Positions 34,757-57,339 are shown, counted from the stretch's first letter. The stretch is 64,000 bases of DNA from Oopsacas minuta (GCA_024704765.1 JAKMXF010000111.1:310001-374000), one strand, 5' to 3'. Made by a program: numbers and translations. The notes: generated by a model not told the origin, from the letters alone.

Positions 34757-35005
34757 TACAAGAAAAAAGAAATGAAAGAAAGTTAAAAGAGTTTATGAGT
34801 ATAGGAGAGTAAATAGGATATAGTAGATTAACAGTCAGAGAGGGAGTTAGTCTTGTAATTATCAGATTTGACTTTTAACCGAATTCCTAGTAAGATATCT
34901 CTTGATACAGAACACTGCAATTATTGCAACAGCTAAAATCGCAGCAATAACGAGCAATAAGAATACTATTACTGTAATTAAGACACCTTCTTGAGCATAA
35001 ACATT
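34757..35005 (-). repeat. Inverted duplicate of the receptor TM/tail/3'UTR segment (48642-48890)
   Basis: 249 bp with 5 mismatches counted by eye; encodes NVYAQEGVLITVIVFLLLVIAAILAVAIIAVFCIKRYLTRNSVKSQI*. Confidence 0.95.
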
Positions 35006-37113: not shown

Positions 37114-40100
37114 ATGAAATCGCTAATTTTCTCAATCTTGCTGTTAACTTTGCATCTTCAACAGATAATATGTTCAGGTAATATATTTTGTAGATAATTT
37201 TTCGCAGTAGAGTATTCACTAGATATAATATTGTATAATGGAAGTCGGACAAGACGCGACCCTTGGCGGATCCAGGGGGGGTGGGGGACGTATCCCTCCA
37301 TCAGGATATATTACATGATATGGAATCATAATGGTATTGGAAAATCATGCCAATACACTGAAATATTGGCCCAGTTTGCAAACCGTAAATTTTAAGCTCT
37401 CTTTGCTTGCATATTAACCTCAATCATATATGAATATTGTTTCAATCTACGGACGGTTATACCTAACGTAATTATTCGAAAATTACCTTATACAAATGGA
37501 TGCAAGTCATAAATATGTTTATAAACACAACTAGCGCGCTTCGCTGGCTAGGTCCCTGCGGGACGGGCGGAAATATCCTTGAACTTTGTCACTTGTTTTG
37601 CATAAGTATGAAACAGCTACATTACAAAAAATGAGGAGCACTTAATGCTCTGTAGCTAATAAAAATAATGTTTTCTGTATAGTGGTCTTCTCAGGAAGTT
37701 TGCTACGAAGTGATTTTCAACCTTTTTGTATAATAACGCCTTTTCCAGGGGGAAATATTCCCCGGATTAACCGTTGAATCAAAATCTAGAACATCATTTG
37801 AATTATTGTCGAAAAGGTGTGAAAAATTGATTAATTATATGATAAATAAGTATACGTATGTATACACCTGACGAACATCAACAACGAATAGAATTACAGG
37901 TTACGTTCGGTGTAATACAGTTCGTTCATCAGGATATTAACTATACACCAAAGCGTTACTCATACATGGAAGTTCTGTATAATGTATAAATCATACTTTG
38001 CTTCGCTAATATATTGCAGGAAACATAGAACTAAATTCTCTTAATTACACTCTTTCATATCCAGGTGCAAATTTTGGACTTCCAGATAATGGATGCCAAG
38101 GAATTACATCTAGTGGAAAGTGTATAAACTATGTTAATAATGCGATCGGAATAAATTGGGAGAATTCTAAAGCTCTATGCACAGCACCTCAAACAATAGC
38201 TTCTATTTCTTCCAGCGAAGAGAATGATGTGTTGTACAGCCTCACTGATGTATCTACTGGCTACGTAGATTGCTGGATAGGATTTAATGACATAATTACA
38301 GAGAATTCATTTGGGTGGGTTGACGACAGCTCAGTTAGCTATACAAACTGGGGCTATGGTCAGCCAAATGAGGGATCAGGAGATGAAGACTGTGTACAAA
38401 TAACTCCAGACTCTTATTGGTATGATATTTCATGTGAAGACATTAAGCACTGCTTATTTTGCAGTTCTGAAGGTAAAATATTTAATATTATTAGATGCAT
38501 TATTTCTGATATTTTAATCATTATATCAATTTCTAGTTGACAGATTTGGACGTGTTGTTCCAGAAGCAGGCTTGGGAGATTTTACAATCTTAACCCAAGA
38601 CACTACACTATACTGCATTGAGGAGGGAACATACTCTTTAACCTGGCGCTCTACTTTCATAGGTGGATATAGTGACATTATCATTATTCCCACTCCTAAT
38701 ACGCACGGTGAAAGTGAGTTAGATATCCAGCTGGATGAGCCGGGCTACTATATGTGTGAGGCTACGATAAACAATGGGATACCTAAGATGTATACAGTAG
38801 CATTATTGAAATCTGGAATCTATCAAGGTAATCAAAATTCAAGTCTGTAGCACCTAGAAGGTCCTTAATCTATTCTAAACAAATACTATTCGCAGTTTTA
38901 TATGAACGCACTAAACCAGGAATTATATCCATATTTCAATGCATCAAAATTTGCTGAAAAATTCCTATTATTGTTAAAGTGTTATGTATGATCATTTAGT
39001 GGACCCATTCGGAGAAGATGTGATTAACTCATTTTTCCAAGCTTTAAGTGACAACACTATCCTAACTACAAGCCAAACTATATACTGCCTCGCGAGCACA
39101 GAAGATACTTCGAGATTTAACTGGGTGTACATTAATGCAGACGGTATTGCAACAACCTTACCTCATGTAATGGGTACCAGCAAGGGAGTTAGTGCTTTGT
39201 ATATAAACACTGCTAATCCAGGTTCATACAGCTGTGAAGCGACACTTAATGATGGAACCAAAAGTATATTTACTGTAATTCTTGCGCCAACTCTGTATAC
39301 AGGTAACCAACTATGTGTTTACTACTAATGAATTCAAATTATACTGTCACAAAAGATATTTTTAGCAATGCATTTAAGGCAATGTTGCAACTGAATAGTC
39401 CAATATTGGCTGCTGCCGAGTATCAGTATTCGGTATTCGGCTGACTGAATATATTTGGCTGATCGACTATCTATTCGGTCGGAGCAGTTTCAACCTTGAA
39501 TTCAAACAACTTAATTTTCCTGGGAAAATCTCGGACAACTAAAATTTTTCACTTTTTTGGCTGATTTCTCTGGAAAACATAGATTTTGAAAGTGATTAAT
39601 TTATAAACTATCTGAGGTCTTTTTACCGAAGGTACTGTTATTAGACAAAAAGATTTTTCACTTTCAAAATCAAAATTTTCCAAAAATCATCCTAAAGTGA
39701 GCAAAGATGAAACTTTGGTGGATTTCAGTATTACATATCAAACTTGGTTGCATTCCTGGTGGTTAGCGGAATTTCGGTTACACGAGATTTTTTCTAAGAA
39801 ATGATGTAGCATGAAACATGTCAATAGCTTCATATTGAATCTCCTAATCCCTAGATCCAATAATTGGATGTGATGCAATTACTGACAACGGTAATTGCTA
39901 CAGATATATCTACATCGCTAGCGGGCTTAGCTTTTCTGATGCTCAATCCAGTTGTGAAGCAAATGGAGGAGATCTAGCTTCAATATTTTCTAGTAGAGAA
40001 GATAACTTGTTGAGAAGTCTAGTACCTAATAGTGATACCAATTGCTGGATAGGGTTGGAAAACTTTTATGCCGACGCAGCCCAACATGCATGGATTGATG

Positions 40101-43100
40101 GCACTCCTGTTGAATACCATGATTTCGACCTCAGCGGTTGTAGACGTCGTAGAGGTCTTGAACTCGATGAACCAGCTAGATATCGTAGAACTGTTGTAGA
40201 TTGTTTGAGTATTGCTGTTCGAGGTACCTGGCGTACAAGTTCTTGTGCTAATACAAAATCTTGCTACTTTTGCACGAATAAAGGTAAATTTGTAACAATA
40301 TTAATATTTAGAATTCAATCAAATATCGCATCTCATGATTCATTATCTATTTCAGTGAGAAAGATGTTTGCAATGCAATGAATATATATGTTTGTGTAGT
40401 GAGTCAATTTGGACAACTTATTGAACCAAACCAATACACAAGTTTGTCTGATAATGCTATTCTGACTGCTTCAACAACTCTACACTGTATTACAGAACCG
40501 CTAGGCAATTCACAGGTTATCTGGAGTTATGTCGGTCTAGATGGGACAACAAGTAAGACGTTTGATGTTGCAACAGATGCTACTACGGGGTTAGTTCATT
40601 GGATGTAGACATAAATACTCCTGGATACTACAGCTGTGAAGTGACACAGTTCAGAGGAGAGGATAGGAAGAAGTATACTACAGCACTACTCAATCCATAT
40701 ATCACAACAGGTATGTATATATTAATCTGTAGGAATTGGAGATAGGTTTACTTACTAACAAATATACAATATTCCTATAGTGATTTCAGCTGGAGATACA
40801 CGGTATTATACACACGGATTAGACAAAGATGGTATTCTCCTATTTTGCAAAAGTTTTGACCACTCGGTAACATTTGGGAACATTGCATGGAGAACAGCTT
40901 CCGCCGTTGAATACCCTAACCCTCTAGATGTTAGTAATATCCCTTCAGACTTCTATATGATTGATTGTATTGATAAGAGTACTGGTAACAAGCTATTTAC
41001 TGTTGATTTACGTATTCAAGGTTTGTCATACACAGTGGAGCTTACTACTAACCAATATAGAATGTGTTTATTAATTATTTTCTTACAGGTCCGCCTGTTG
41101 GAACTATCCAAGAATTGAATATTGAGACATTCTCTCTCCCTCCTCCTCTACTAAATAAAGCATATGTTCCTTACAATACAACAACAACAGATCTTAGTAT
41201 TAATGTGATGTACACCAATATGGGTTGGAGAGGTCCTGCAGTCGAATCCTCTGATAGTAATGTACGAGTAACAATGTTCTTAAGTGTTGATATAGGTGAA
41301 TACTACTTTTATGCCATTAACTGGGATAAAGAGAAACAGTTAGCTTTACAGATCCTGATTGAAGGTTTGTTCTGTTTTGAAAAGATTGATAGAAATTATG
41401 ACAGAATTATTATACAAATTGAATTATATAAATATTCCTCTAGTTTATCCACTCGGAATCTTCCAAGGGAGTTCCATTTTATATTTAGAAGAATATTCAA
41501 TTGTAGAAAATGGCGAAACACTCAACTGTGCAGATTATGACCAATCTACAATAGCCTGGTACTTATATGAATTCCAAACGAGGGTTACTCAATTGCTCCA
41601 CGAGGCCACAGGTACTATCCAATTGACATTAGGACAATTACCTGCAGGCCTTCTCTATTGTCAGGTAGTAGAAAGAGGAGCATACGCGCCTACCTATCAC
41701 GATCTTGTTCTCAATGGTCCAAGTCTTACAGGTTAGATAACTTCCTATACATTCTCCATATATAATTCCAAATGTAAATCTTTTGAGTTAATCTGTATAT
41801 GTATAACCACTTCCTCCAACGCCTGTTTCTCAATGATATTTGATTATTATTATTATATGACTAAGGCTGTTGGTTGAATATAGAAATTTACAAGAAATTT
41901 TTCTTCTGAGAAACCCAAAAATTTCAATTCATCAAAGCTGTAAATTCGTGTTTTTTTTTTCTAATGGAGCACAAAAATTGATTATTCAATAAAATCTTTC
42001 GTCAATTTCCTTACTTATAGATTTAAGTTTCACTGATGTGAGCATAATTCCCTTTCCCTGCTTATTGAAGTTGCCTATTTATAGAGGCCTCTATTATAGA
42101 GATTGCACTGTTTCAACCAGACAATCTCAGGCCTCAAATATGTATTCATAATGTGCATTGAATTAATAAATGTATCTGCATGATTTTCCACAGTTGTTGA
42201 AGAATCAAATTCTTACATATTCACAAGAGATCAACAAAGCGATACTGAAGAATTGTTATTATGTCACAAAGCTGACAACTCTCTTAATGCTGTTTTCCTT
42301 ATTTGGAGAGAAGTGGGTCAGACAAAATTGTATTTTAATCCTCTATCAACAAACTATATACAAATATACAGAAGATATCTTATGGAATGCATTGATGCTG
42401 TCACGAATGAAACAATATTAACAATAGACCTCTTGCTACAAGGTTTGATTGATTCAATTTATCAACATATTAGCTAAATACTATACTCGTGTACCAAAAT
42501 AACGATAATCATATACAATGGATGCCAGTTATAAGAACATCCTTGGGAGTATCAATTAGTGCATGTTGTTATAACCGGCATACCGTAATACAATAATACA
42601 GTCAACATCCGATAACTTGAACACTGAAATGTGTTTGCATAATCGAATCTTCGTGTTAACGGATGTATACTATATATGAAAATCGTTTTCCAGAGCATCT
42701 TGCTAATAACCGGCATCCACTACACTGTACTTGTTATTGTTTGTATTTACTACATTTATAGGACCAGTTTTGATAACACTTTATGATGGATTCTATGAGA
42801 GTGCTATATCAACGTCAGCATCATTAAACTACAGAGCTCAGGATGTAGTACTAAGTGCTAATGTAGTTGGTAGATGGATGAAGCCTGATCAAACTTATGT
42901 CGAAGATAGCTCTATTACATTCTCAACTTTTGAATTGTCTGATGTAGGAATGTATACCTTTTCGATCCCTAATTGGGATTTGAATAGTGGATATACAGGA
43001 GATTCAACAATAGAATTTACTGGTATGTATTTACAGCGTTTCCTACCTGTAGTGCATGGATCAGGTCTACAGGATCTCAAAAATTCGTATTAAAATCTAT

Positions 43101-46100
43101 GGAAGGGGTCCACGGGTGAAAAGGGTTGGGATACGCTGATCTATATGCTATTATTTTACCGACATTATTCTCATTAGTTTATCAAGCTGGACTTCTAATA
43201 ACTGCAAATACGTATGAAGAATTGCCTAACTATTCCGTGATTCCTGCTAGCACGACTCTATACTGCATAGATACAGTTGACAATGAAGTTGAATGGCAAT
43301 ATGAAGATCTAGCTGGTACCATTACTAATATCGAGTCTTTTACAGAGTCAGAGACTGGAGTTAGTTTACTGAGTGTAAGCATTGATGAACCTGGATTCTA
43401 CAGGTGTACTTTGGATACCATTAGTGATAAATATATTCATACTACTGTCATTCTTAACACTTCAATCTATACAAGTATGTATACATATTTTAAATATTTA
43501 CATATATAACAAATAAGTGCATGTAGCATGAACAAGGCATAATCTCTTTCTCTAGTTGTCCAGCAGGCGGGTCAATTATTCACATACACGATTGGAATAG
43601 ATGCAGCGAGCACGAGCCTAATCTGTGTAGGAGAAGGGAGTCGAGTTTATATAAATATTGATTCGACAGAAGAACTGAGTAACCCTTTAGAGGTTAGAAG
43701 TATCCCAAATGATGGAAATACGCACACGATTGCATGTAAAGATACAGATATTGATAGCACGATTATCTCTTTCTCCCTCTTTATACAAGGTCTGTTACAT
43801 AATGTACAGATAGTCTCTATTTTAATAAGAACAGGATAAGTGGATTACAGTTGTGGAACTATCATGAATAATTGTACAATACGCAACGAGTTCTATCCGC
43901 TAACAATATTTCTTGTTTAAAGTATCTGCGGTCAACTACAATTACATTAACACACGAATATATTGAAATACCCGCTTATATCAAAACCTTAAATTGCATT
44001 ATGCTACCAAACCTTCAAATTGACATAAATTACACTAATTTTATTGAACTCAGCTTATATTGAAGTAATTATCGTGGTCCCTTGAGCTTACTGGTAATGC
44101 CAATAAATATAATGTAATTTCCACAACAGGACCACCAGTCATAACGCTAGATGCTGGAACATCCGACAACTACGAACTGCTATCACCAGAAATCAATTCA
44201 GCATATGTCAATCTTAAGTCTCCTAACGTAGGCCTACATGTGAATATTCCAGGTAGATGGCAGAGGCCAGATGAGACATTTGTGGAAGATATCTCGATAA
44301 TCTTTCCAGTATTTGACTTAACATATGAAGGTTTATACAAGTTCTATGTCATTAATTGGGACAATGAGGAAACACTAGCTATGCAGATATTGATTACAGG
44401 TATGGTATAATTGTATTATCAAATTATTCCTTAGTTTATATTTTTTCTTTCTGATTAGTGTATCCATTTGGAGAAAGGATTGATGAGAATACGTACAGAG
44501 CTATTTTAGAAAAAAATTCATACTTGACTGCTAGCACAACTCTCTACTGTAAAGGAGCGACTGACTTGGCTTTTGTCGTCATTGGAAGTAACTCCCAAAC
44601 TCCAATTGATTCTGGGTCTGAAGTTAGTATATTTGATGCTGAGTCCCCTGGTCTATATATCTGTAGAAGCACTGAGACTTATGAAATACTTCTTATTGAC
44701 GAATCAATACATACACGTAGGTTGAACGAACAATTTTAGTCATATGTGAGGAGGCTGCTCATCCAGCTAATTCCGAACACTTTTCATGTGCTTCCAACGC
44801 CCATAGAGTAAACATCCGAATCATTATTCACGTATACGATTGTTAAATATATCCAGTTTATATTCTATTTCTTTAATAGCTATACAAGCATCAAACTCCT
44901 ACACATATACACGAGATGTAGACAGAAATGATGCATCCCTTGTATGTATTACACCTGACAACAGTGATCCATTTTTCCAATTTTGGGTTGACATTGAGGA
45001 GAATTTGATTTCAAATTCTTACTACCTAAACGTGGATGCACTTGAGGATGGAATAAATCTATTAATCTGTATATCATCCAGTTTTACGAATACAATAGCA
45101 CTGACTGCAGACATATTCATACAAGGTTTGTTGACTTCAATAACAACAGAATCGTAACTGGCTCTTACTATACGGGTCTATACTCTAGTGATCATAGTAG
45201 TATTTGTGTAGTATATTTTATAACCAGCGCGTTTCGCTTGCTAGGTCTCTATATAGATATAATGTACCTTGTTGTTCCAACAGGTCCTCCTGAAATCACC
45301 CTGAATACAGGTACAGTAGAGAGTTATAATTCTCTTACTCCTGGTGACAACACAGCTAGTATAAATCTTCAAGCACAGAATGTAGTTCTAGCAACTAATC
45401 TAGCTGGTAGATGGCAGAGACCAAATGGAACATTTGTTGAAGATGACTCGATAACATTTCCAACTTTTGAGATATCAGATCAGGGAGTATACAAGTATTA
45501 TGTGAATAATTGGGATAAAATAGAAACATTAGCTATTCAAATACAATTATCAGGTACATCTCTATCTTATATGTATTGTATTGTTGTATGTAAATCCATG
45601 CAAACGACAAAAAACCTTTAAAAGAAATCGAATGGGAATAATACATTCCTAATGTTATAACTCACAAGCATAATCTGATTATTAAAACTTTAACTGCCGA
45701 CGAGGAATAAAAATATTCACATTAGAAGAATCCTATACCCGAGGTGCACATTCACCCCCAGAAAGGACCCATGTACCAATTTTCATGTCAATCGAAACAG
45801 GAGATTTCTCAGGGTACCCCGCACTGACGGAAGTAGTACACCGTCCATTGCAATAGGCTATTTCCCTATAGGAACTGAATCAACAATAATTTTCTTGGAT
45901 AAATGAATATTATCTAACTTAACACATTTCTTAACAATATACTTTAGTGTTTACATTTGGACAAGAGATAGCATCAAGTGTATACGAAGATTTATCAGAT
46001 CTTTCAGTATTGACTACAAATACTACTCTATATTGCATAACAGAGAAGATAGACATTCCAGAAGTAATCTGGAACTATGAAGATCTACAAGGTGTCAGGA

Positions 46101-48785
46101 CATCACTATCCGCTGATACGGATTTCTTCACCGGGTTTAGTTCATTACTCGTAACAACAGATAAATCAGGCTACTATAGCTGTAACGTCACAGAAAATGG
46201 CATCAATAAGATGTATACTATTGCCGTTATGAATCCATATGTGTATACAGGTGTGTTGCATTAGTTTTCACAGGTAAATGTATATCAGCTGATATTTGTA
46301 TTATTGCTAGTTGTTGAGGTTGCTGATTCATACTCATACACTGTGGGGATAGACAAAGAGGTTGCATTTCTATTCTGTCACCCATCAGGCAATTCAATCC
46401 CATTTCAAGATTATGGTTGGAGAGAGTTTGGCTCTACTGTGAGAACTCAGAACCCTCTAGACATTGCAGACATTCCTGACGACGGAGACACCCATGCAAT
46501 GGGATGTTTTGATTCGTTGGAAAATTCAGCAATATTTTCAGTTGATGTAATTATTCAAGGTTTGTGTATTGCTTGTATAATGCATACCAAACTAGTGTGC
46601 TCTTATCAGCTTTATCTCCATTGTATACATTTCCAAATGATTATATATTCTTTCAACAGGCCCACTCGTCATAACATTGGAAACTGGAAATGTCGTATCA
46701 TTCAGTCAGGTGTTTCCTTACATGAATACGGTATATGTTAATCATCAAGAGAGTTTGGTTCGTCTTCAAGCCAACGTAGATGGTTCATGGTCGTGGCCTG
46801 GTGGAGCTGATGATGCTAGAACATTAGATGTATCTCCTTTTCAAATAAATACACAGGGATTGTATACCTTCTTCATTGATAATTGGGAGAAAGAAAGCGT
46901 AGCAGTTATGCAAATCTTCATTACTTGTGAGTATTTACATATTATTTGGAATATAATTTAGTTTCTAATGTATTTACCCTAAAAAGCACAAAGCTTTGTT
47001 GTTGTTTTGTTAGAGATTTGATTAGCCAACTTAAACCAATCAAATACTTGCCAAGCATCCAATGGAATGGAATGTATGGGAAAGTTCGATTTGTAAAAAT
47101 TCAGTAAATTTGAAGGGAAAAAATAGTATAATTTGCATAAATAATAGAAATTCAGGTTTTCTAGGAAAATATCAGGAAAACAGTCACAAGGGGTCGAAAT
47201 TATTCTTAATAACAACAGGTGCGGACAGCCCAAGCACATTTGTATACTCGAAATTGGCTGTGAAGTTTCTCCCTTAATATTTGCATATTTATTTGGCAAT
47301 ACTCATTTAGCATATCAATTCGGAGAGAAGATCGATCCAACTAATTACAATAGATTAGAAGCAAATTCTATTCTGACTAGCAACACAGATCTCTACTGCA
47401 TAAATGGTGAAGTTACCTGGAGCTACACAGATCTAGCTGGTATTTGTGAACTTAAAACTGGTACAACTGATACCACGGGAGCTAGTGTATTGTCAGCTGG
47501 GTTAGACAATCCAGGTTACTACAGCTGTGAAGTGATACAAGATGACGTCAGCAATACATATACTGTAGCTGTTCTGGATACAACTCTGTTACAAGGTTAG
47601 AAATTCTCACCTTAATTAAATATCTGAATCGATCTATCTATCCTATTTAGTAATTGAGACATCGGAATCTTACCAATACACAATTGGAGTTGACAATGAA
47701 GATATATTTCTATTCTGTCACAAACCTGACAACTCAATTTCATCTTCTGACATCGTTTGGATGAAGAATGACTCATTTGCTCGTTTTAAGAATCCTCTAG
47801 ATGTATTTGCAGTTGGAAATCTGTTTAAATACACAGACACCTATCTTATAGAATGTCTAGATCAAACCAGTGAAAGTATTTTGAGTGCTAATATCTCTAT
47901 GCAAGGTTTGAGCTATAGAATTCACAAAAATATACTTACTGTCACTTTATAATAATTGCTGTCACTCCACAGGGCCACCTGTCATAAGCGTGGATACAGG
48001 GACAGTACGATCATTCGAGTCTCTCACTCCTGACGGAAACATAGCTTATATTATCGATGAGACACGGAATGTAGTTATAACAGCCAATCTTGTTGGAAAG
48101 TGGCAGAGACCTGATGATACTCATGTTTCTGACAATTCAATTACTTTCTTATCATTTGATGAATCAGACGTAGGCGTATACAAGTTCTATGTAACAGATT
48201 GGTACAATGAACAGAAGCTAGCTATTCAAATCCAACTCTCTCTCTCAGGTGAGTACTGTTAATGGAGATATTTTAGTTAACATTCATTTATGTGTTTGTA
48301 TTTGTTCTCTAGCAACCTACCTACAGTCAGTAACAGATCTATCAACTGTAACATCCAGTGAAAGCTCCATTCTTGTTACCTGGAGTTTGTTATCAGAACA
48401 GACTACCCTCTCTGATGAGAAATTCTCAATTTACTACGGATACGAAGATATAGAATATTTCGCTGGTACAACTGACAGACTCTACTTCAACATTAATGGA
48501 TTAACTCTCAACTTCAACTATACTATCCGTGTAGACCTACAGTTCGCATATTCTACAGAAACATATTCAGAGACTGTTCATCATTTCCTAACAATTCCAG
48601 ATATCACTGAGCCTACAACAATCCTCCAATTATTCACAAATAATGTTTATGCTCAAGAAGGTGTCTTAATCGCAGTAATAGTATTCTTATTGCTCGTTAT
48701 TGCTGCGATTTTAGCTGTTGCAATAATTGCAGTGTTCTGTATCAAGAGATATCTCGCTAGGAATTCGGCTAAAAGTCAAATCTGA
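37114..48785 (+). CDS. Giant C-type lectin / Ig-like-repeat / FN3 type-I membrane receptor, 24 exons, about 2,270 aa
   Basis: Exons: signal 37114-37177; CTLD 38065-38472; IgA 38537-38827, 39000-39302; CTLD 39855-40283. Triads A/B/C: 40400-40710/40781-41020/41089-41364; 41444-41731/42194-42442/42762-43022; 43178-43474/43556-43789/44130-44399; 44459-44716/44880-45125/45284-45553; 45948-46250/46311-46559/46660-46926; 47311-47595/47651-47905/47973-48248. FN3+TM+tail 48313-48785. All GT-AG and phase 1. Every internal exon is 3n long except 40400-40710 (311 nt; one G short at 40587-40590). Confidence 0.88.
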
Positions 48786-48926
48786 TAATTACAAGACTAA
48801 CTCCCTCTCTGACTGTTAATCTACTATATCCTATTTACTCTCCTATACTCATAAACTCTTTTAACTTTCTTTCATTTCTTTTTTCTTGTAAGTATTATTT
48901 TCCCCAATCTGTTAGCTGTTGTTGTA

Positions 48927-49485: not shown

Positions 49486-50479
49486 CTAAAGCATGTATGG
49501 AATGTGAATAGATATGATTTTAACACTTTCAATAATAGCGTACTTAGAGAAAAGGTTGTTCGCCAATGTTTTGTGCTCTTTCAGTCATCAAAATGACAAC
49601 TATATGTAGTATGTGTATGTGTGTGGATATTAGAATACTCTCAGGGCGAGGGATATATTGTTATGATTTATGGTATATCTGTAAATATTTTCTGACATAG
49701 AATATCACAGAAAAATGAGTTTACCAAGGTTAGGAACCATTGTCTCATAGCTTCGTTATAACGAGACTTTACTATATTATGTGTAATTGAATCTATTCGC
49801 ATAAGAACAGTGTCTAATAATATTTGAGATATATTTAGACACACATTATATGATACGGATACTTGTAATAGATATATTATACTCTATACACACAATATGT
49901 ATAAGCTTCTGTATATAGTTCTATATTATCAGAACGATGGAAATGATGTATAAAGTTAAAGGGGGAATTTATCGAAACATTTGATAATCAATTATGATAA
50001 GTATAGGTTTATTATATGAATTATGAAAAAAAGTCTCATTATTTATTGAACAACCCTTGTATATATCGTACTCTTGCTGCAAGTCGAGCGTTACACCTCC
50101 AATGTGCATTACAGGTTGGAAGTTGTTCCGTATAGAACCAAAGAAGGAGTATTTTGAGGTGGTTCTTCTGTTTCTGGCTCGGAAATGAATTTTGAGATTG
50201 GAGAAGTTGTTCCACTGTTGGTGGAACAACGTCTCCGTCACATCTCGGATTTGCTCGTTCAGCTCTTTGTCGACCACAGCCGCCAGTAGAGGTAATTTAA
50301 CCCTCTCAGTTAACTTTTCCAAGAGTTTGGTATAGCTCTCATTGGGGCGCTCTAGCGCCCCAATATATTCAACGCAATAGTGTATTCATAAGAGAAGGTG
50401 ATATATTCGACAAATTAAATATTGGTATTTTGATATTATGGTATAAATACACGTATGTATTGAGATCAACCATTGAAGT

Positions 50480-50960
50480 TATAAAATTCCTATACGAAGT
50501 GTGTGATAGTTATCTGATAAATAAAAGGTAATTACCTGTTGAAATCCAAATAACACAATTTAGAAGCATCTAACGCATTAATTGACATTAATATTTCAAG
50601 ATTTGTATTAGAAAAACGTTTGCCAAGTTCTCTTATGATCATTGGAATAGCATCTGCTTTAAAAGACTGGCCAGAACTCATGCCCTCGAACTTGGCTCTG
50701 ACACCTTCGATCGAAAAGAGAATTTTCATAGTCAATTTATCTTCCGATCATAGAACACACTAATTTGGAATCTGTTAACCACATTTCCTAGTGATATCTC
50801 AAGTAGTAATTGTTTATAGCCAATATTTCTCCAGCAATTCGTGTCCACTTGATTGAATTTTCTTGCATAGCTAAGTTCAAACCTATGCATTATAGATAAC
50901 ACCTCATGAAAACACCAAAGAGATTATAAAGTTACCAGAATTGGTAGAATCATACTTTCA
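50480..50960 (-). mobile_element. Degraded hAT (ZMYM1-like) transposase fragment
   Basis: IIRELGKRFSNTNLEILMSINALDASKLCYLD resembles the ELxxRF...L..S..AL segment of such transposases; frameshifts upstream. Confidence 0.4.
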
Positions 50961-53900
50961 ACGACTATACTGGGGTAATCGAGTATGCTGAGTCTGAATA
51001 TTGTAAACAACATCAATATTATTAAATCTCAATTGTTGTTTGTTTGTTTGTTTGTCCGTTGAATACCTCGAGGCGCAATGCGCCAAGTTCATCATGAGGC
51101 GGCGAGCCAAAGGCTCGTACATTTTAATATTCGTAGATTATAATGTGTGCGTTAGATTTCATTGAGATAGTTAGCTTTAGATTTAGATATTCTCAGTTTA
51201 TTAGATTTCCGTGTAGATTAGCTGATATTATTCATGCTCTTTAGTTATATCTTGTAATTTGATTAAACTAGTCTCACCAATTCTAAGTTTTTGGTATAAG
51301 TACGTAGTGTTATTAACAAAATGACAGTTATTATATTCTCGTGAAATAACTCGAAAGCCCTTCTGCCATACTTTTTGGAAAGCAATGAATATTTTTTATA
51401 TATATGTAAATGGCATATTGTATTACTTCGAGAACCAACATGAGTATATTTTGAATAAGAGTTTATGAGTCCTGACCAAGTACAAGTATACAAGGATAGT
51501 ATTGCTTGAAAGTGCTTGAAGTTCATCAATTTGGGACAGAAATCCAAGTTCAGAATTGGCCGTCTTATCCATTCATAGCAAATGTAAAGCCCACCATATT
51601 TACCAACACGAATGACACGATGCGATTTTCTGTATCCAACACTTGTATGTTAGTCTAAATACTAGCCATTGGAAACTTGGAAATATGTCTTGTGTGAAGC
51701 ATTAAGCTTATGATTTGGTGCATACCTGCCTACCACACTCACAAACATGTAACTCAATTTTATTGTATATCCTATTTCAGTACCAAATGAATCAAAAATG
51801 CTGTCAGCAATAATATTATTGAAACATTCGTAGTGTGATTATTACTTATATACTGTGTGAGGCTAGCAATGTGGAAATAGCTTACAGAAAAATTGAACAG
51901 CTTTAGTGAATGTCTTCAGCAAACATAATCTTCAAAGAGGATTCTAAATATGAGAGGGATGCAACATAACTTTATACATCTGTAATAAAATCACTTACGG
52001 CAAGTACATCCCTTCTTCTGAATAGTTATTAATTACATATAATCTTACAATTTGGAATACATACTTCTAGTATGTATGTATAACTACTAGAGGGCGCAAA
52101 CCCAGTCCGAGTTCGAGTCCCATTTGGCTGAGGCTTAGTTTGAGCTTCTGCCTTCGTGCCGGGCTTGGGACCACACCTGTCATTAAATTTTGAAATAATA
52201 TGGTTTAATTCCATATAATAAATTCAATTCATTGATTAAATTTGTATTCAAACTTCCTGATTGTACTATTGCGTGGTAGAATTACTACCTCTATTACTGG
52301 TACCATTTTATACGAGCGTGAAGTTAGCAGCGAGCTAACAGCGAGAAATCGAGCACACTTTGAATCGGTATATTTTTGTTACCATGGGGTGCAGAGAGGT
52401 GCCATTTGGAGGATACCAATACTATGCTAGGTAGTTTAGACAATTTGTTAATTAACACAGGTAAACAAATGATGTAATATAAGAAGTAGGAAAATAATGG
52501 CACAAAGAGTTCAGGTCTACTTTACTAATTTTTCACTTGCTAATGTGCTAGATAACATGCTACTTGATGACTTATCCCTAGCTAACGTTATTGATTTTGA
52601 AGTAAGTACTTGCTAATTGTAGCTAGTAGAATCTAATTCAGATTCTTTGTTCCGAAAATTCACTTTATCTTCTGAATGAACTTTTGTCACTGGTTGAAAA
52701 TGACTTAATTAGAGACGAAGATATATCCTCTTTTCTGTTAACGGGTGTACATCTTTCTTATCGTTGAATCCATAAGCCGAATATTTATTCCAACAGCAGT
52801 TCCAATCTTTATATAGGAATATGTCAGTTTTGAGCAATCGTACTGCTAAAATAACACCAGGTCGATACCCACAGTAGCTTTGAATGGCTATCCGTAGGCT
52901 TTAGGGTCTTGGGTACATTTAAAGCGCATAAAATGTATTATGTATCTATGGGTTATTGCGTATAACTAGTTGATTGACAGCAAAATATTATTGGTATGGC
53001 TTCTATTTTTTGAGTTATGGTGACGTAATCACAATTTGTGAAACATGTAAACCAGCATAAATCTATTTAGGTTGGAGTTAGGGGTATACAATATATTATT
53101 TACTTATGGGTTAATCACTATTTAAAGTAGATTGGCCAGATATAGTATTTTATATGGCTTCTATTTTCCTTGTTATGATGACGTAAGCAAATTTATAAAA
53201 GTTAAATTCCGGAAATATGTGTTATTTGAGTTATTTAGATAAAGTGTTCACACTAAAATCATTTGCCAAGGGGTAAAGTGTTTAGATTGTAAATTTAACG
53301 TTCTTTTTGCTGTATTATTACGGCAATAGCAATTTTAGCAAAGAAACGAATATAATTGAAATTTAAATTAGTCGGGTAACTTGGACGTTTTTGCGTGTTC
53401 TTAATACCCGACGGTTAATTATCCTTTAAATTTAAATAAAACTATTGTAGCCTTATTTCGATCCAAGTGTTTGGTCCTGTCATAAACTCCTCAGTTACCT
53501 CGCCTTTTCCGCAATACACGTCAGATAGATCAGTGTTAATTAACGTTTGCGCCACTGGGGATAGGTCGTTGTGGGTCGCGTTTCTATTATCTGGGCTCGC
53601 CGTGATTGGGCTTGCGCAGCCTGAATAGCCTCGGACAGAGGTCCCCACAAGTTTTGATGTACCTTGTCATTGAGCGTTTGTGAAACTATTTGTGTGGAAG
53701 TTGAAGAATGAAGGCAAGACGCTACTCAAATATTAACGAATTAAATAATATGTCTCTTGATCGTTAGTCTGGTGAAGCAAATTTGCACCTTTCAGCCTGT
53801 GGGTGTGTCCGATTCCTCCACATTACTACACCTATAAGAATATTACTAAACCTTTCAGAACTGGACAGACACATCATTACGCTTACTGAAAGCATCACGT

Positions 53901-55068
53901 TCATACTTCAATTAGCTGAATTTCTCCGAATTTAGGAGAATTCGCCATCTGAAAGATCAAATATCTGGATGAAGGAATCGACTACCGTTCTGATTGATGG
54001 TTGAGAGAGAAGAAAATCAAATGCTTCCTAGTTATGCATTTAGAATTTAAAATATTTGCTAGAAATTTAGTAAAATAAAGTAGTATAATATGAATTGCTT
54101 AAATTCTGAAGTACTTAAAAATTAACGGGTCGCTCTAATAAAAATGCTTGGTGTTCATTTGCGGGAAGTTGCGGGAGGCTGGATTTAGTTCTAAATTACA
54201 GATAATATCATGACAAATCACCCTAAAACTTTATATTACCTGGCCACGACTGGCCACAGTGAGTTTGAGTCGATTTGTAGTTGTTATTATTTGTATTATT
54301 AACATGGCTGTTGTTGCTCATAATCGAACCATCTGAATAGAATTCAAAACTCGCCAATAACTTAGCGAAAAGCCATAAATCAGTATCAAAATGAGGCAGT
54401 ATAAAATTCCCTGAATTTTCTTAACTCTATGAAACACTTAGGCGCCGTTGCAGGGGGACAGAGGAGCCTGCCCACCCTTGGAAAAGTTTTTGAAGGCTGG
54501 GTCTATCTCGCCCCAGGATGCCAGGGGCTTGGTCTTGCTCCATCTCCCAAGATTTTCACAAAAATTCGAAATTCTACGCCTATGATAAAACGAAACATCT
54601 TTAAAACATATATCGAAAATACACTTGCTCCAAAGATAGCTATTTTCAATAGAGAAGTTAGCCATACATCTATACAAGCAGATCCTACACTATACCAATG
54701 GAATAAAGATTCATCATAGATATTTACCTCATGGATATAATGGATAATGAATAGGCCTGTTGTGACTGATAAGTCGATTCTTATAAATAGAAATAGGAAG
54801 AGAGATATCGAGAAATATGCGAGATAAACACGAGGACAGATATTTTGGGGGCTTTATTCATTATAATTTAGAGTTTTAACAGAGTGATCAGGTTACAGAG
54901 CTTATACTTGATTCAGGCTGTTAGCTGTAAGTTATGTTTAGTTACAATTATGGCTCATTCAATTACGTTAATTCATGAATATAGTTAAAGCTAATGACAA
55001 GATAACTAAGTGAATATTAACAAATTACAGTATAGTATAGTATGCTATGACACTAATGCTTGGAGTAT

Positions 55069-56325
55069 TCAGAAAGCTAGGAGATTAAATTTCTTGTTCC
55101 TTTGAGCTACAATAATTTTATTCTTTTTGTCAATAGCTACTCCATAGGGATAATTGAACTTTTGATCTCCTGGTAGCATATCACTACTAATAGTGTGTAG
55201 GACTTCTCCTTTATTGGAGAATATCTTGATTTGATTTCCTCCCCAATCCGCTACGATAATATTCCCCACTTGATCAATTGAGAAGAAATAATTCCAAATA
55301 ATCTCACGTTTTCCTATCAAACACCTTACTAGCTCTCCTTCTAGAGAGAATATTTGTAGATGGAAAGGGGGATAGTAACCAAACATGACATACATGTTAT
55401 CTTCGTACAGTTTTATGCTATCTGTTTCTGTATCGGATTTAACTTGAGTAGTTTTGAGTTTGATTCTTTTCAGGAATTTGAGATCTTCATCAAACACGAT
55501 TACTGATTTGTTCTTAAGCTCACATCCATAAACATTCATGTCTCTATCAATGTCAACTCCCCAGACTCTTCTCTCTGTTTTAACCGATTTGATAGACTCA
55601 TGGCTTGACTTTTCTATCTTTACTAGCTCATCTTTAGCAGATACGAAAATGAATTCATTCATTAGAGCTATTCCAATAGGCCATTGAGGTGTTGGTATTT
55701 TGTAGAGATGGTTACCTTCTCCATCGAATACTTGTATTATGTTAGCGCCATTATCAGCAACAAATATATTCTGTGTTTTGTTGTCAATTGCTATTTGCCT
55801 GGGATTAGCAATCTCACCAGAACCTGTCCCTTCTCGAAACCAGAGAGGGCACAATTTCACAGAATTGTCAACTGGTATTATAGGTCTCTCCTTCTGTGCC
55901 ACAACCTTACACACATCAATCACTGATTGTTCCAGCTGTTCCATCTTCCAGTCCAACTCTACCCACCCCACATTCACACTCCTTGCTACCTCCTCTCTGA
56001 TCTCATCTTCTAGCGTTCTTAGATTCTTCTCGAGTACTTGCTTCAATTTGTTCTTTGTCAAGTCCCTCTTTAGTCCTTCTCTGGCTGTGCACAATTGCTG
56101 GAGGAGTTCTCTCTTCTCATTGAACTCTTGTCTCGCTCTCATAACAACCTCATCTATCTCTTTCAACAGACTATGCTCCCTCACTACCAACAGACTGTGT
56201 AACTGCTGGAAGTTACAACTCACTTTCTCTTTCCCTATCTGCACATGGTTAATCAGATCTGTTAGATTCCTCTCTAACTCATCCACACACATCAGTTCTC
56301 CTACTGCTGATACTCGTGTCGCCAT
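55069..56325 (-). CDS. Coiled-coil + NHL-repeat protein (TRIM-NHL-like, no RING/B-box); intronless
   Basis: 418 aa. Heptad-rich N-terminal about 140 aa, then NHL repeats (PRQIAIDNKTQNIFVAD; SIDQVGNIIVADW; YPYGVAIDKKNKIIVA). Confidence 0.9.
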   Translation of the reverse strand: MATRVSAVGELMCVDELERNLTDLINHVQIGKEKVSCNFQQLHSLLVVREHSLLKEIDEVVMRARQEFNEKRELLQQLCTAREGLKRDLTKNKLKQVLEKNLRTLEDEIREEVARSVNVGWVELDWKMEQLEQSVIDVCKVVAQKERPIIPVDNSVKLCPLWFREGTGSGEIANPRQIAIDNKTQNIFVADNGANIIQVFDGEGNHLYKIPTPQWPIGIALMNEFIFVSAKDELVKIEKSSHESIKSVKTERRVWGVDIDRDMNVYGCELKNKSVIVFDEDLKFLKRIKLKTTQVKSDTETDSIKLYEDNMYVMFGYYPPFHLQIFSLEGELVRCLIGKREIIWNYFFSIDQVGNIIVADWGGNQIKIFSNKGEVLHTISSDMLPGDQKFNYPYGVAIDKKNKIIVAQRNKKFNLLAF

Positions 56326-57339
56326 AACTCTTAACTCAAACGTCGAATTTTAACTAGAAATAATATACAATTAAACAAATAAAGAGTGTATTATTTGATA
56401 ATCTAAATAGGCAGACAATTGTTATTAGATAGAATTACATTTCTCTAATTATAGAAGACCTTTCAGATATCTGATTTTACCAATTTAAAGATTTATGGTA
56501 TAAACAATTGCCAAACAACTACCTAACATCAACTCGTACATAATATCAATCCAAATCGAGGGGCTTAAAATCCTCTAATCACCAGCTAGACGCGGGTGTA
56601 TAACTAATACAAGAAATGACTGGGTCCACAAACAATAAGAAACACTCTTAAGACAATATCGATTGTAAAATAGATACTAGTTGACTGGCTCCGGTATAAA
56701 CTGATAAGAGCTATTGTCAGTTCATTTTAGTTTAGTATGATGAGTTTGGAATTTTTCTGCTGAAGAAAACAGAAACAATAAAGTTCAAAGAGTAAGTAAT
56801 CGACTAAACTTGTAGTTACAAACGAGTTTACTCAAAAGCAATTGGAGATAAGTTCTGTGAGTAAATCTCCGGGTAGACAACTGAAAATTGGTGAAGAAGA
56901 TCTTCTCTCTTCTCTTTTGTGAGAGAAAAATCTTTCACAAAATTATCTAAAAGTTTTCAACTCTTCCCTTGTCTTGGTCGGTTCAATTATGACTTTCATA
57001 CATTTTGACAACGGACTGTAAGTTATCAGTTTTTCTGAGAGAAAGTCTTGGAAAGAGTCTTGGATAAACATGATAAATACATAGTTACAATTTAAAAATT
57101 GCATACCGTAAATATTTCCTTGACAACGGACAAGCAAACAAACAGACAAACAAAAACACAATAGAGATTGAAAAATATAGATATGATATACATACAGATA
57201 GATTGCGTTTTAGTAAGGTACATCCTCGCTAATACGAACAGCACTGTTCTGATTAGAATATAATTCGTTCGGATTAGCGAAATCAAATGCACAGAAAACA
57301 ATACTATAGAATCTGGGAGCCTATTCTTTTGAAAGTTGT

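What the first reader, a model, noticed from the sequence alone, without database searches (positions are those of the whole stretch)
37114..48785. Hidden giant lectin-Ig receptor built from six A-B-C Ig-like triads
Seen: 24 exons assemble into signal-CTLD-A-A-CTLD-(A-B-C)x6-FN3-TM-13 aa. The three Ig-like classes are distinct and keep strict order. A has C...W...Y-x-C (TTLYC...W.Y.DL.G...PGYYSC). B is short, with FC...W...NPL...C. C lacks cysteines (GPP.I...G.W..PD...D.G.Y.FY..NW). Copies of one class are strongly diverged. Established: CTLD and Ig domains are recognition modules. Inference: a lineage-specific recognition or adhesion receptor whose repeat unit is a three-domain supramodule. 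I do not recognise this architecture from any named family.
Basis: partly seen in the sequence, partly recalled or inferred. Interest (0 to 1): 0.8.

Follow-up and report, generated by a model that had tools for sequence, protein, structure and literature searches.

The report
Glass-sponge lectin receptor with Ig triads
This is a real, already annotated but misnamed and unstudied gene of the glass sponge Oopsacas minuta. It encodes a long cell-surface protein with two sugar-binding-type modules and six repeats of a fixed three-part antibody-like unit, and those repeats are changing unusually fast between two recent gene copies, as in recognition molecules.

Summary
The + strand at 37114-48785 carries one 24-exon gene, with every junction in phase 1. 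Its order is signal peptide, CTLD, A, A, CTLD, (A-B-C)x6, FN3-like domain, membrane span, and a tail of about 14 residues.

The gene is not hidden. It is GenBank KAI6657342.1, "Mannose-binding protein C [Oopsacas minuta]", 2252 aa. That name is wrong: there is no collagen region, and there is a membrane span. 23 of my 24 exons match the GenBank model exactly.

- A is a canonical Ig domain.
- C is a cysteine-free Ig-like fold (pLDDT 96.7, Z up to 9.5).
- B has no sequence relatives in Pfam or the PDB and probably has a compact Ig-like fold (Z about 6).

The A-B-C triad is a conserved unit. The genome holds at least 135 A, 72 B and 104 C matches. I counted 40 triads in 264 kb and found no reversed order, across four architectures and several tail types. 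Relatives were seen only in glass sponges (Oopsacas, Vazella).

Against a roughly 97% identical duplicate 106 kb away, the Ig-like exons show excess amino-acid change (129 of 149 substitutions, P=0.005). There are no stop codons where 8.2 are expected under neutrality.

One caveat: both copies share a frameshift in exon A3.

The scan had already noted related genes nearby (s1-309856, s1-257410).

The parts
37114..37177 (+). Exon 1: start codon and signal peptide MKSLIFSILLLTLHLQQIICS, with a phase-1 donor G|GTAATA
   Evidence: identical to residues 1-21 of KAI6657342.1
38065..38472 (+). Exon 2: CTLD1, with QPN at 38361-38369 and WYD (in place of WND) at 38418-38426
   Evidence: Pfam Lectin_C E=6.9e-17; motifs; exact match to the GenBank protein
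38537..38827 (+). Exon 3: A1, Ig domain
39000..39302 (+). Exon 4: A2, Ig domain
   Evidence: (Ig_3 E=0.027)
39855..40283 (+). Exon 5: CTLD2. It lacks EPN/QPD and WND and has a basic insert, RRRRGLELDEPARYRR
   Evidence: Pfam Lectin_C E=5.9e-13; sequence
40400..40710 (+). Exon 6: A3, the first A of triad 1. It is 311 nt, with a one-base frameshift at the G4 run at 40586-40589. Homology to the other A copies continues on both sides of the shift. GenBank bridges it with a 44-nt intron (40590-40633) that deletes VSSLDVDINTPGYYS
   Evidence: the paralogue carries the same sequence, 350/351 nt
40781..41020 (+). B1
41089..41364 (+). C1
41444..41731 (+). A4. This is the most diverged exon against the duplicate: 42 of 288 nt and 30 of 95 aa differ
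42194..42442 (+). B2
42762..43022 (+). C2
43178..43474 (+). A5
43556..43789 (+). B3
44130..44399 (+). C3
44459..44716 (+). A6, a short A copy that lacks the Trp segment
44880..45125 (+). B4
45284..45553 (+). C4. This is the copy that was folded: pLDDT 96.7, Ig-like
45948..46250 (+). A7
   Evidence: Ig_3 E=0.0028 and ig E=0.0075
46311..46559 (+). B5. This is the copy that was folded: pLDDT 86.9, with Ig-like matches at Z 5.3-6.2
46660..46926 (+). C5
47311..47595 (+). A8
47651..47905 (+). B6
47973..48248 (+). C6
48313..48785 (+). Last exon. It holds the FN3-like domain (48315-48620), a linker, the membrane span (48660-48740), the tail IKRYLARNSAKSQI (48741-48782) and the stop codon
   Evidence: Pfam fn3 E=0.009; PDB profile hits are to FN3 domains only, E 0.03-0.8

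Best explanation
The gene encodes a type I membrane glycoprotein of about 2,250 residues. It belongs to a large CTLD/Ig-like receptor family found so far only in glass sponges.

Shown:
- The order is signal peptide, two C-type lectin-like domains and 20 Ig-like domains, then one FN3-like domain, one membrane span and a tail too short to signal. The 20 Ig-like domains are 2 A next to the lectin domains plus six A-B-C triads.
- The triad is an evolutionary building block. Each domain is one phase-1 exon, the order A-B-C is never reversed, and the block was multiplied or combined with lectin domains to give several architectures.

Inferred mechanism:
- The protein stands on the cell or syncytium surface as a long rod.
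- CTLD1, which keeps a QPN motif, may bind a glycan. The Ig-like triads supply further, rapidly diversifying binding surfaces.
- Because it has no signalling tail, it would act as an adhesion or recognition molecule. It may also act as the tail-less partner of paralogues that put similar ectodomains on longer tails or on a tyrosine-phosphatase domain.

I think the most likely biological role is recognition at the tissue surface, of self versus non-self tissue or of microbes. Diversifying selection on the Ig-like exons would keep copies different.
For: Gene model:
- The model was built independently and equals GenBank KAI6657342.1 in 23 of 24 exons.

Domains:
- The CTLDs pass Pfam.
- The A profile hits FCRL5 at 4e-9, and also LRIG1 and NCAM2.
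- The C model has pLDDT 96.7. Foldseek gives probability 1.0 to I-set Ig domains, and VIA gives Z 9.5 to KIT D1.
- The B model has pLDDT 86.9. Nearly all of its top VIA matches are Ig-like, at Z 5.3-6.2 over 70-78 of 82 residues.

Family:
- The genome has at least 135 A, 72 B and 104 C matches.
- In 264 kb there are 40 ABC triads. The adjacent pairs counted are AB 41, BC 42, and BA/CB/BB 0.
- Architectures seen are LAAL(ABC)nF, (LLABC)n, (LA)nABCF and LABCF.
- Tail types range from about 10 residues to a 641-residue tail with a phosphatase domain.

Selection, measured against the 97% identical duplicate:
- Introns are 1.94% diverged. In the Ig-like exons pN is 3.66% and pS is 1.98%, with 129 of 149 changes non-synonymous (P=0.005).
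- The pN/pS ratio for the CTLD, FN3-like and membrane-span exons is 0.48.
- No stop codons are seen where 8.2 are expected under neutrality (P=2.6e-4).
- Indel events are 14 times rarer per base in exons.

Context:
- Glass sponges lack aggregation-factor genes yet show allorecognition.
- A C-type lectin is their putative aggregation factor (PMC5400394; PMC4557014).
Against: - Exon A3 has a frameshift shared with the duplicate. If it is real and is not spliced around, translation would stop after about 590 residues.
- There is no expression evidence for this gene. Only a Vazella relative of L-A-F type is known to be transcribed.
- CTLD1 has WYD instead of WND, and CTLD2 lacks the sugar-binding motifs, so lectin activity is uncertain.
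- The dN/dS test rests on one pair of copies and a simple counting method. The differences are patchy: some exons are identical and A4 is 15% diverged. Unseen gene conversion could therefore contribute.
- B's Ig-like fold rests on middling Z scores.
Confidence: 0.65

Rival explanations
1. The gene is a decaying duplicate, a pseudogene or on its way to becoming one. On this reading the shared A3 frameshift inactivated the ancestor of both copies, and the excess amino-acid change is only relaxed constraint.
For: - Both copies share the one-base frameshift in A3.
- The sister copy has also lost its ATG through a 10-nt deletion and has a 1-nt gap in A1.
- GenBank needed a 44-nt intron, shorter than any of the other 22 introns (minimum 55 nt), to keep the frame.
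Against: - No stop codons are seen in the 5.8 kb of coding sequence compared, in either copy, where 8.2 are expected under neutrality (P=2.6e-4).
- Exon indel events are strongly depleted: 3-4 in exons against 28 in introns.
- The CTLD, FN3-like and membrane-span exons have a pN/pS ratio of 0.48.
- The ratio in the Ig-like exons is significantly above 1, not merely about 1.
- The frameshift sits in a G4 run, and the whole exon is identical in both copies. That pattern would also fit a shared assembly or polishing error.
Confidence: 0.13
2. The triads are only a passive spacer stalk, like the CCP repeats of selectins. They would hold the lectin domains away from the membrane. All specificity would lie in the CTLDs, and the divergence in the triads would be tolerated variation or gene conversion.
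For: - The CTLDs sit at the N-terminal tip.
- The number of triads varies from 1 to 6 between paralogues.
- The differences between the copies are patchy, with identical exons lying next to diverged ones.
Against: - Non-synonymous divergence in the Ig-like exons is 1.9 times intron divergence (Fisher P=2e-6) and exceeds synonymous divergence (P=0.005).
- No donor for the diverged A4 exon exists elsewhere in the assembly.
- The CTLD, FN3-like and membrane-span exons, the supposed specificity part among them, are the conserved ones (ratio 0.48).
- CTLD2 lacks the sugar-binding motifs.
Confidence: 0.17
3. The exons belong to two or more separate genes, or the array is an assembly artefact.
For: - The region is duplicated about 106 kb away on the same contig, and a third partial copy lies on the small contig C356.
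Against: - All 23 junctions keep phase 1 with usable GT/AG sites.
- There is only one signal peptide and only one membrane span.
- The independent GenBank model joins the same exons.
- Paralogues on five other contigs have the same architecture.
Confidence: 0.03

Closest known systems
Selectins (CTLD-EGF-CCPn-TM-short tail)
   Same: Both are type I membrane proteins. Both carry a C-type lectin-like domain at the tip of a long stalk of small repeated domains, followed by one membrane span and a short tail. The number of stalk repeats varies between family members.
   Different: This protein has no EGF or Sushi/CCP domains (Pfam). It has two CTLDs. Its stalk is built of Ig-like triads that evolve faster than the lectin part. 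The resemblance is an analogy of design only.
Mannose-binding protein C / collectins (the name given in GenBank)
   Same: Both have a C-type lectin-like domain.
   Different: This protein has no collagen-like Gly-X-Y repeats and no neck. It has a membrane span and 20 Ig-like domains. The GenBank name is an automatic best-hit label.
Mannose receptor / PLA2R family, and CD23 (names given to the paralogues)
   Same: These proteins also carry CTLDs. Some paralogues here have several.
   Different: Pfam finds no ricin-B or FN2 domains and no tandem run of 8-10 CTLDs. The protein is type I, not type II like CD23.
Aphrocallistes vastus lectin AvL, the putative aggregation factor of a glass sponge (Gundacker 2001, cited in PMC5400394 and PMC4557014)
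   Same: Both are glass-sponge C-type lectin proteins that are membrane-associated or carry a hydrophobic segment. Both are candidates for cell or tissue adhesion.
   Different: AvL is a single-CTLD polypeptide of about 34 kDa with a hydrophobic N-terminus. It has no Ig-like array. I had no AvL sequence, so I made no sequence comparison.
Lineage-specific invertebrate IgSF/lectin immune receptor families and paired receptors (for example snail FREPs and amphioxus VCBPs; these examples are from my own knowledge)
   Same: In each case Ig-like domains are combined with a lectin-type domain. The families are large, clustered and rapidly diversifying. Here, similar ectodomains also sit on different tails.
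   Different: The domain classes and the fixed three-domain repeat are not those of any of these families. I did not test homology to them.
[quoted passage not shown]
   Same: Both are candidate self/non-self and adhesion molecules of sponges, encoded by clustered, repeat-rich genes.
   Different: None of the aggregation-factor domains is present. Aggregation factors are absent from hexactinellids (PMC5400394).

Membership tests
Immunoglobulin superfamily (class A) | Significant sequence similarity to Ig domains, and the Cys(B)-Trp(C)-Cys(F) pattern | tested here: met
   The A profile hits FCRL5 at 4.1e-9, LRIG1 at 7e-6 and NCAM2 at 1e-4. Cys26 and Cys73 are invariant. Single copies stay below the Pfam cut-offs.
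Immunoglobulin-like fold (class C) | A seven-strand Ig beta-sandwich, plus the canonical B-F disulfide | tested here: inconclusive
   The fold is met. pLDDT is 96.7, Foldseek probability is 1.0 to I-set domains, and VIA gives Z 9.5, rmsd 1.5 Å over 70 residues to KIT D1. The disulfide is not met: the window copies contain no cysteine. No Pfam family matches.
Immunoglobulin-like fold (class B) | An Ig beta-sandwich with the Cys-Trp-Cys pattern | tested here: inconclusive
   L-x-C, W and a second C are conserved. The model has pLDDT 86.9. Nearly all of the top VIA matches are Ig-like, but only at Z 5.3-6.2, and Foldseek E is 0.05 or weaker. There is no Pfam or PDB sequence match, even with a 34-sequence profile.
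C-type lectin-like domain (PF00059) | A Pfam score above the gathering threshold | tested here: met
   The two domains score 62.6 and 49.9 bits against a cut-off of 22.6. The whole protein gives E=8.5e-28 with two stretches.
Ca2+-dependent sugar-binding C-type lectins | An EPN or QPD triplet plus the WND motif | tested here: inconclusive
   CTLD1 has QPN and WYD. CTLD2 has neither. Relatives keep canonical motifs: P0009 has EPN/WND and the Vazella protein P0160 has QPD/WND.
Collectins / mannose-binding protein C | A collagen-like Gly-X-Y region, and a secreted protein with no membrane span | tested here: not met
   No run of four or more G-X-Y repeats is present. One C-terminal membrane span is present.
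Mannose receptor family | Ricin-B and FN2 domains followed by 8-10 tandem CTLDs | tested here: not met
   Pfam on the full GenBank protein finds only Lectin_C (two stretches) and weak Ig matches.
Selectins | An EGF domain and Sushi/CCP repeats after the CTLD | tested here: not met
   No EGF or Sushi match in Pfam.
Fibronectin type III (membrane-proximal domain) | A Pfam fn3 score above the gathering threshold | tested here: inconclusive
   fn3 scores E=0.0091 and 16.6 bits against a cut-off of 25. A 10-sequence profile hits only FN3 chains, but at E 0.03-0.8.
Sponge aggregation factors | [quoted passage not shown] | tested here: not met
   No Calx-beta, VWA or VWD match in Pfam on the full protein; Wreath was not tested. 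Hexactinellids lack aggregation factors according to PMC5400394.

The most novel reading that the evidence does not exclude
This family would be the long-sought self/non-self (fusion or rejection) and adhesion system of glass sponges, which lack the demosponge aggregation factors. On this reading the A-B-C triad is a three-domain binding unit whose exposed loops are kept different between copies and individuals. The tail-less members, like this one, would pair with phosphatase-tailed or tyrosine-motif-tailed relatives to turn recognition into a signal.
Probability: 0.15. Interest if true: 0.85.

Novelty: new variant of a known kind. Interest (0 to 1): 0.58.

Why it matters
Glass sponges are syncytial animals that can tell self from non-self tissue, yet they lack the aggregation-factor genes used by demosponges (PMC5400394). 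Their recognition molecules are unknown apart from one small lectin.

This gene is a well-defined member of a large, clustered, glass-sponge-restricted receptor family. The family combines lectin-type and Ig-like domains. It contains two Ig-like domain classes that no domain database recognises. It reuses a fixed three-domain block, and it shows a signature of diversifying selection. Together these features give concrete candidates for adhesion, allorecognition or microbe recognition in an early-branching animal.

It is also a clean example of evolution by shuffling of multi-exon modules.

Practically, the public names of these proteins (mannose-binding protein C, PLA2 receptor, CD23, mannose receptor) are misleading.

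Tried and rejected
Steps that failed or were blocked:
- I made a mixed alignment of a minimal family member (P0009, L-A-B-C-F-TM) with single-domain fragments, to fold a whole triad. MAFFT merged the A, B and C fragments into the same columns, so I dropped it.
Only the first 10 kb of each paralogous locus was analysed.

Searches that added nothing:
- A search for collinear homologues of P0009 in other species found only Oopsacas proteins and one Vazella transcript.
- The C profile also hits long bacterial Ig_2/Ig_7/PKD arrays (P0004, P0005, P0007). These match only about 30 residues around the D-x-G-x-Y strand and carry Bacteroidota-type domains. I treat them as generic Ig similarity, not family membership.
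- The ESM Atlas gave the same generic Ig_2/I-set lead.

Ideas rejected:
- Gene conversion from a third paralogue as the source of the diverged A4 exon. The exon has only two DNA matches in the genome.

The contig is sponge DNA, not human.
Full report
**What is there**

The window is AT-rich eukaryotic DNA. It is contig C111:310001-374000 of a 61.46-Mb, 365-contig assembly. The public proteins that match it exactly are from the glass sponge Oopsacas minuta (taxonomy). It is not human.

I listed stop-free stretches on the + strand. I then searched for GT/AG sites that keep the frame. This gives one gene of 24 exons from the ATG at 37114 to the stop at 48783-48785, with every junction in phase 1. 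Most introns are short, 55-170 nt.

Exon 1 encodes a typical signal peptide. The last exon encodes an FN3-like domain, one membrane span (48660-48740) and the tail IKRYLARNSAKSQI. In between lie CTLD, A, A, CTLD and six A-B-C triads. Each domain is exactly one exon.

They were searched exon by exon, by reference.

**The gene is annotated**

A profile of the C domain was searched against 1.84 billion representative proteins, and I then looked up the clusters of the hits. This led to KAI6657342.1, "Mannose-binding protein C [Oopsacas minuta]", 2252 aa. It contains 23 of my 24 exon translations letter for letter. So the gene is not hidden. My model and the GenBank model support each other.

The name is an automatic label and does not fit:
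- There are no collagen-like repeats, and there is a membrane span.
- Pfam finds only two Lectin_C domains and weak Ig matches.
- The genome paper never mentions lectins (PMC10280926).
- My literature searches found no description of this family.

**The one discrepancy: exon A3**

Exon A3 (40400-40710) is 311 nt, which is not a multiple of 3. Similarity to the other A copies runs in frame 0 up to ...DATTG. It continues in frame 2 with VSSLDVDINTPGYYSC. This points to a one-base shift at the run GGGG at 40586-40589.

GenBank restores the frame with a 44-nt intron (40590-40633). That is shorter than any other intron of the gene, and it deletes the conserved PGYYS motif. A 56-nt alternative (40553-40608) with a good donor also keeps the frame.

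The duplicate copy has the same sequence, 350 of 351 nt. The assembly used PacBio plus Illumina reads with Pilon polishing. I cannot tell whether this is a real lesion, a real mini-intron or a shared error.

**The domains**

- **CTLDs.** Both pass Pfam. CTLD1 has QPN and WYD. CTLD2 has neither sugar-binding motif and carries a basic insert. Relatives keep canonical motifs: EPN/WND in P0009 and QPD/WND in a Vazella protein.
- **Class A.** A profile hits solved Ig domains, with FCRL5 at 4e-9.
- **Class C.** It has no cysteine and no Pfam match. Its model has pLDDT 96.7. It matches I-set/C2 Ig domains: Foldseek probability 1.0, and VIA Z 9.5 with rmsd 1.5 Å to KIT D1.
- **Class B.** It is about 80 residues long, with conserved L-x-C, W, NPL and C. 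It has no sequence match in Pfam or the PDB, even as a 34-sequence profile. Its model has pLDDT 86.9, and nearly all its best matches are Ig-like, at Z 5.3-6.2 over 70-78 of 82 residues. I read it as a divergent compact Ig-like domain, with moderate confidence.
- **A, B and C against each other.** They are not detectably similar.
- **The membrane-proximal domain.** It matches only FN3 domains, but below threshold.

**The triad as a unit**

The genome has at least 135 A, 72 B and 104 C matches. I analysed 264 kb in six frames with my own HMMs: the window plus 20 paralogous stretches. This gave 61 A, 44 B and 48 C domains and 40 complete A-B-C triads.
- A precedes B in 41 of 41 cases.
- C follows B in 42 of 43 cases.
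- No BA, CB or BB pair occurs.

The block appears in four architectures:
- L-A-A-L-(ABC)n-F, as in this gene and its paralogues on C277, C11, C16 and C312.
- (L-L-A-B-C)n arrays.
- (L-A)n-A-B-C-F.
- The minimal L-A-B-C-F.

Where an FN3-like domain (F) is detected, an A-B-C triad lies directly before it in all but one case. Tails differ widely. Some have about 10 residues (this gene). Others have 29-69 residues with tyrosine or NPxx(Y/F) motifs. P0003 has a 641-residue tail with a tyrosine-phosphatase domain.

**Spread**

Full-length C matches came only from three sources:
- O. minuta proteins.
- Unnamed single-exon fragments from ENA assemblies.
- Clusters that also hold EukProt transcripts of Vazella pourtalesii.

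Vazella belongs to another family of the same order.

One ENA fragment reads through a short in-frame intron between B and C. It is only 53-56% identical to the best Oopsacas copy, so it comes from another species. The Vazella transcript is of the L-A-F-TM type and is 68% identical at best.

No other animal group appeared in the listed hits, but only the best 150 of 465 were shown.

**Evolution of the gene pair**

The gene and about 8 kb upstream are duplicated 106 kb downstream at 96.6-97.3% nucleotide identity. A third partial copy lies on contig C356. I aligned the two copies exon by exon:
- Introns differ at 1.94% of sites.
- In the Ig-like exons, pN is 3.66% and pS is 1.98%. 129 of 149 changes are non-synonymous against 77.8% expected (one-sided P=0.005). 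Without exon A4 the test gives P=0.04.
- In the CTLD, FN3-like and membrane-span exons the ratio is 0.48.
- Non-synonymous divergence in the Ig-like exons is 1.9 times intron divergence (P=2e-6).
- Neither copy has a stop codon in the compared exons, where 8.2 would be expected from 171 neutral changes (P=2.6e-4).
- Indel events number 3-4 in 6.8 kb of exon against 28 in 4.9 kb of intron.

The pattern is patchy:
- CTLD1, A1, A3 and C2 carry no substitutions between the copies.
- A4 differs at 42 of 288 nt.
- A4 has no other donor in the assembly.

The sister copy has lost its ATG and has a 1-nt gap in A1.

I read this as purifying selection on the reading frame and on the lectin and anchor parts, with diversifying selection on the Ig-like triads. 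Local homogenisation and possibly conversion may also contribute. The method is simple Nei-Gojobori counting on one pair of copies, so this is a lead and not proof.

**Interpretation**

The best-supported reading is a surface recognition or adhesion receptor of a glass-sponge-specific family. It has a lectin tip, an array of diversifying Ig-like triads, and no signalling capacity of its own.

The literature frames why this matters. Hexactinellids lack aggregation-factor genes. They do show allorecognition. Their only known adhesion candidate is a small C-type lectin.

Whether the triad packs as one physical unit remains untested.

Noticed in passing
window 34757-35005 (- strand): An inverted copy, about 249 bp and 98% identical, of part of the gene's own last exon and 3' end (window 48642-48890). 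It lies about 2 kb upstream of the start codon. The duplicate locus has the same arrangement.
   Followed up: partly
window 60343-63000 (- strand): A second family member. It has a CTLD (62635-63000), an A domain (62158-62619), and B plus C in one 171-aa open frame that reads through an in-frame intron (61556-62071). A further Ig-like exon follows. The last exon has a (T-N-P-I/T)n mucin-like stalk, a membrane span and a tail of about 70 residues with YxN motifs.
   Followed up: partly
G000 C111:451824-465240; C356:3638-10835: A segmental duplicate of the gene plus its upstream region, about 97% identical. Its signal exon has lost the ATG (10-nt deletion and 5-nt insertion), and A1 has a 1-nt gap. 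GenBank annotates it as a 2008-aa 'Secretory phospholipase A2 receptor' that starts at A2. Contig C356 carries a third partial copy with the same A1 split.
   Followed up: partly
window 49900-56350: Several interspersed repeats with dozens of copies at 81-94% identity across the genome. They lie at about window 50060-52000, 52870-54270 and 55060-56340, and are probably transposable elements. They mark the downstream end of the duplication at about 49536.
   Followed up: no
G000 C11:494259-494813 (L033:8259-8813, - strand): In one paralogue, B and C lie in a single 221-aa frame with no stop codons. Either the intron is lost or it is in frame. This gives a B-C didomain that could be folded by reference.
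   Followed up: no
P0161 (KAI6658168.1, contig of 23,533 bp): An Oopsacas protein annotated as an adhesion GPCR (Pfam 7tm_2) carries the same L-A module at its N-terminus. The family's ectodomain parts are therefore also used on a seven-transmembrane receptor.
   Followed up: no
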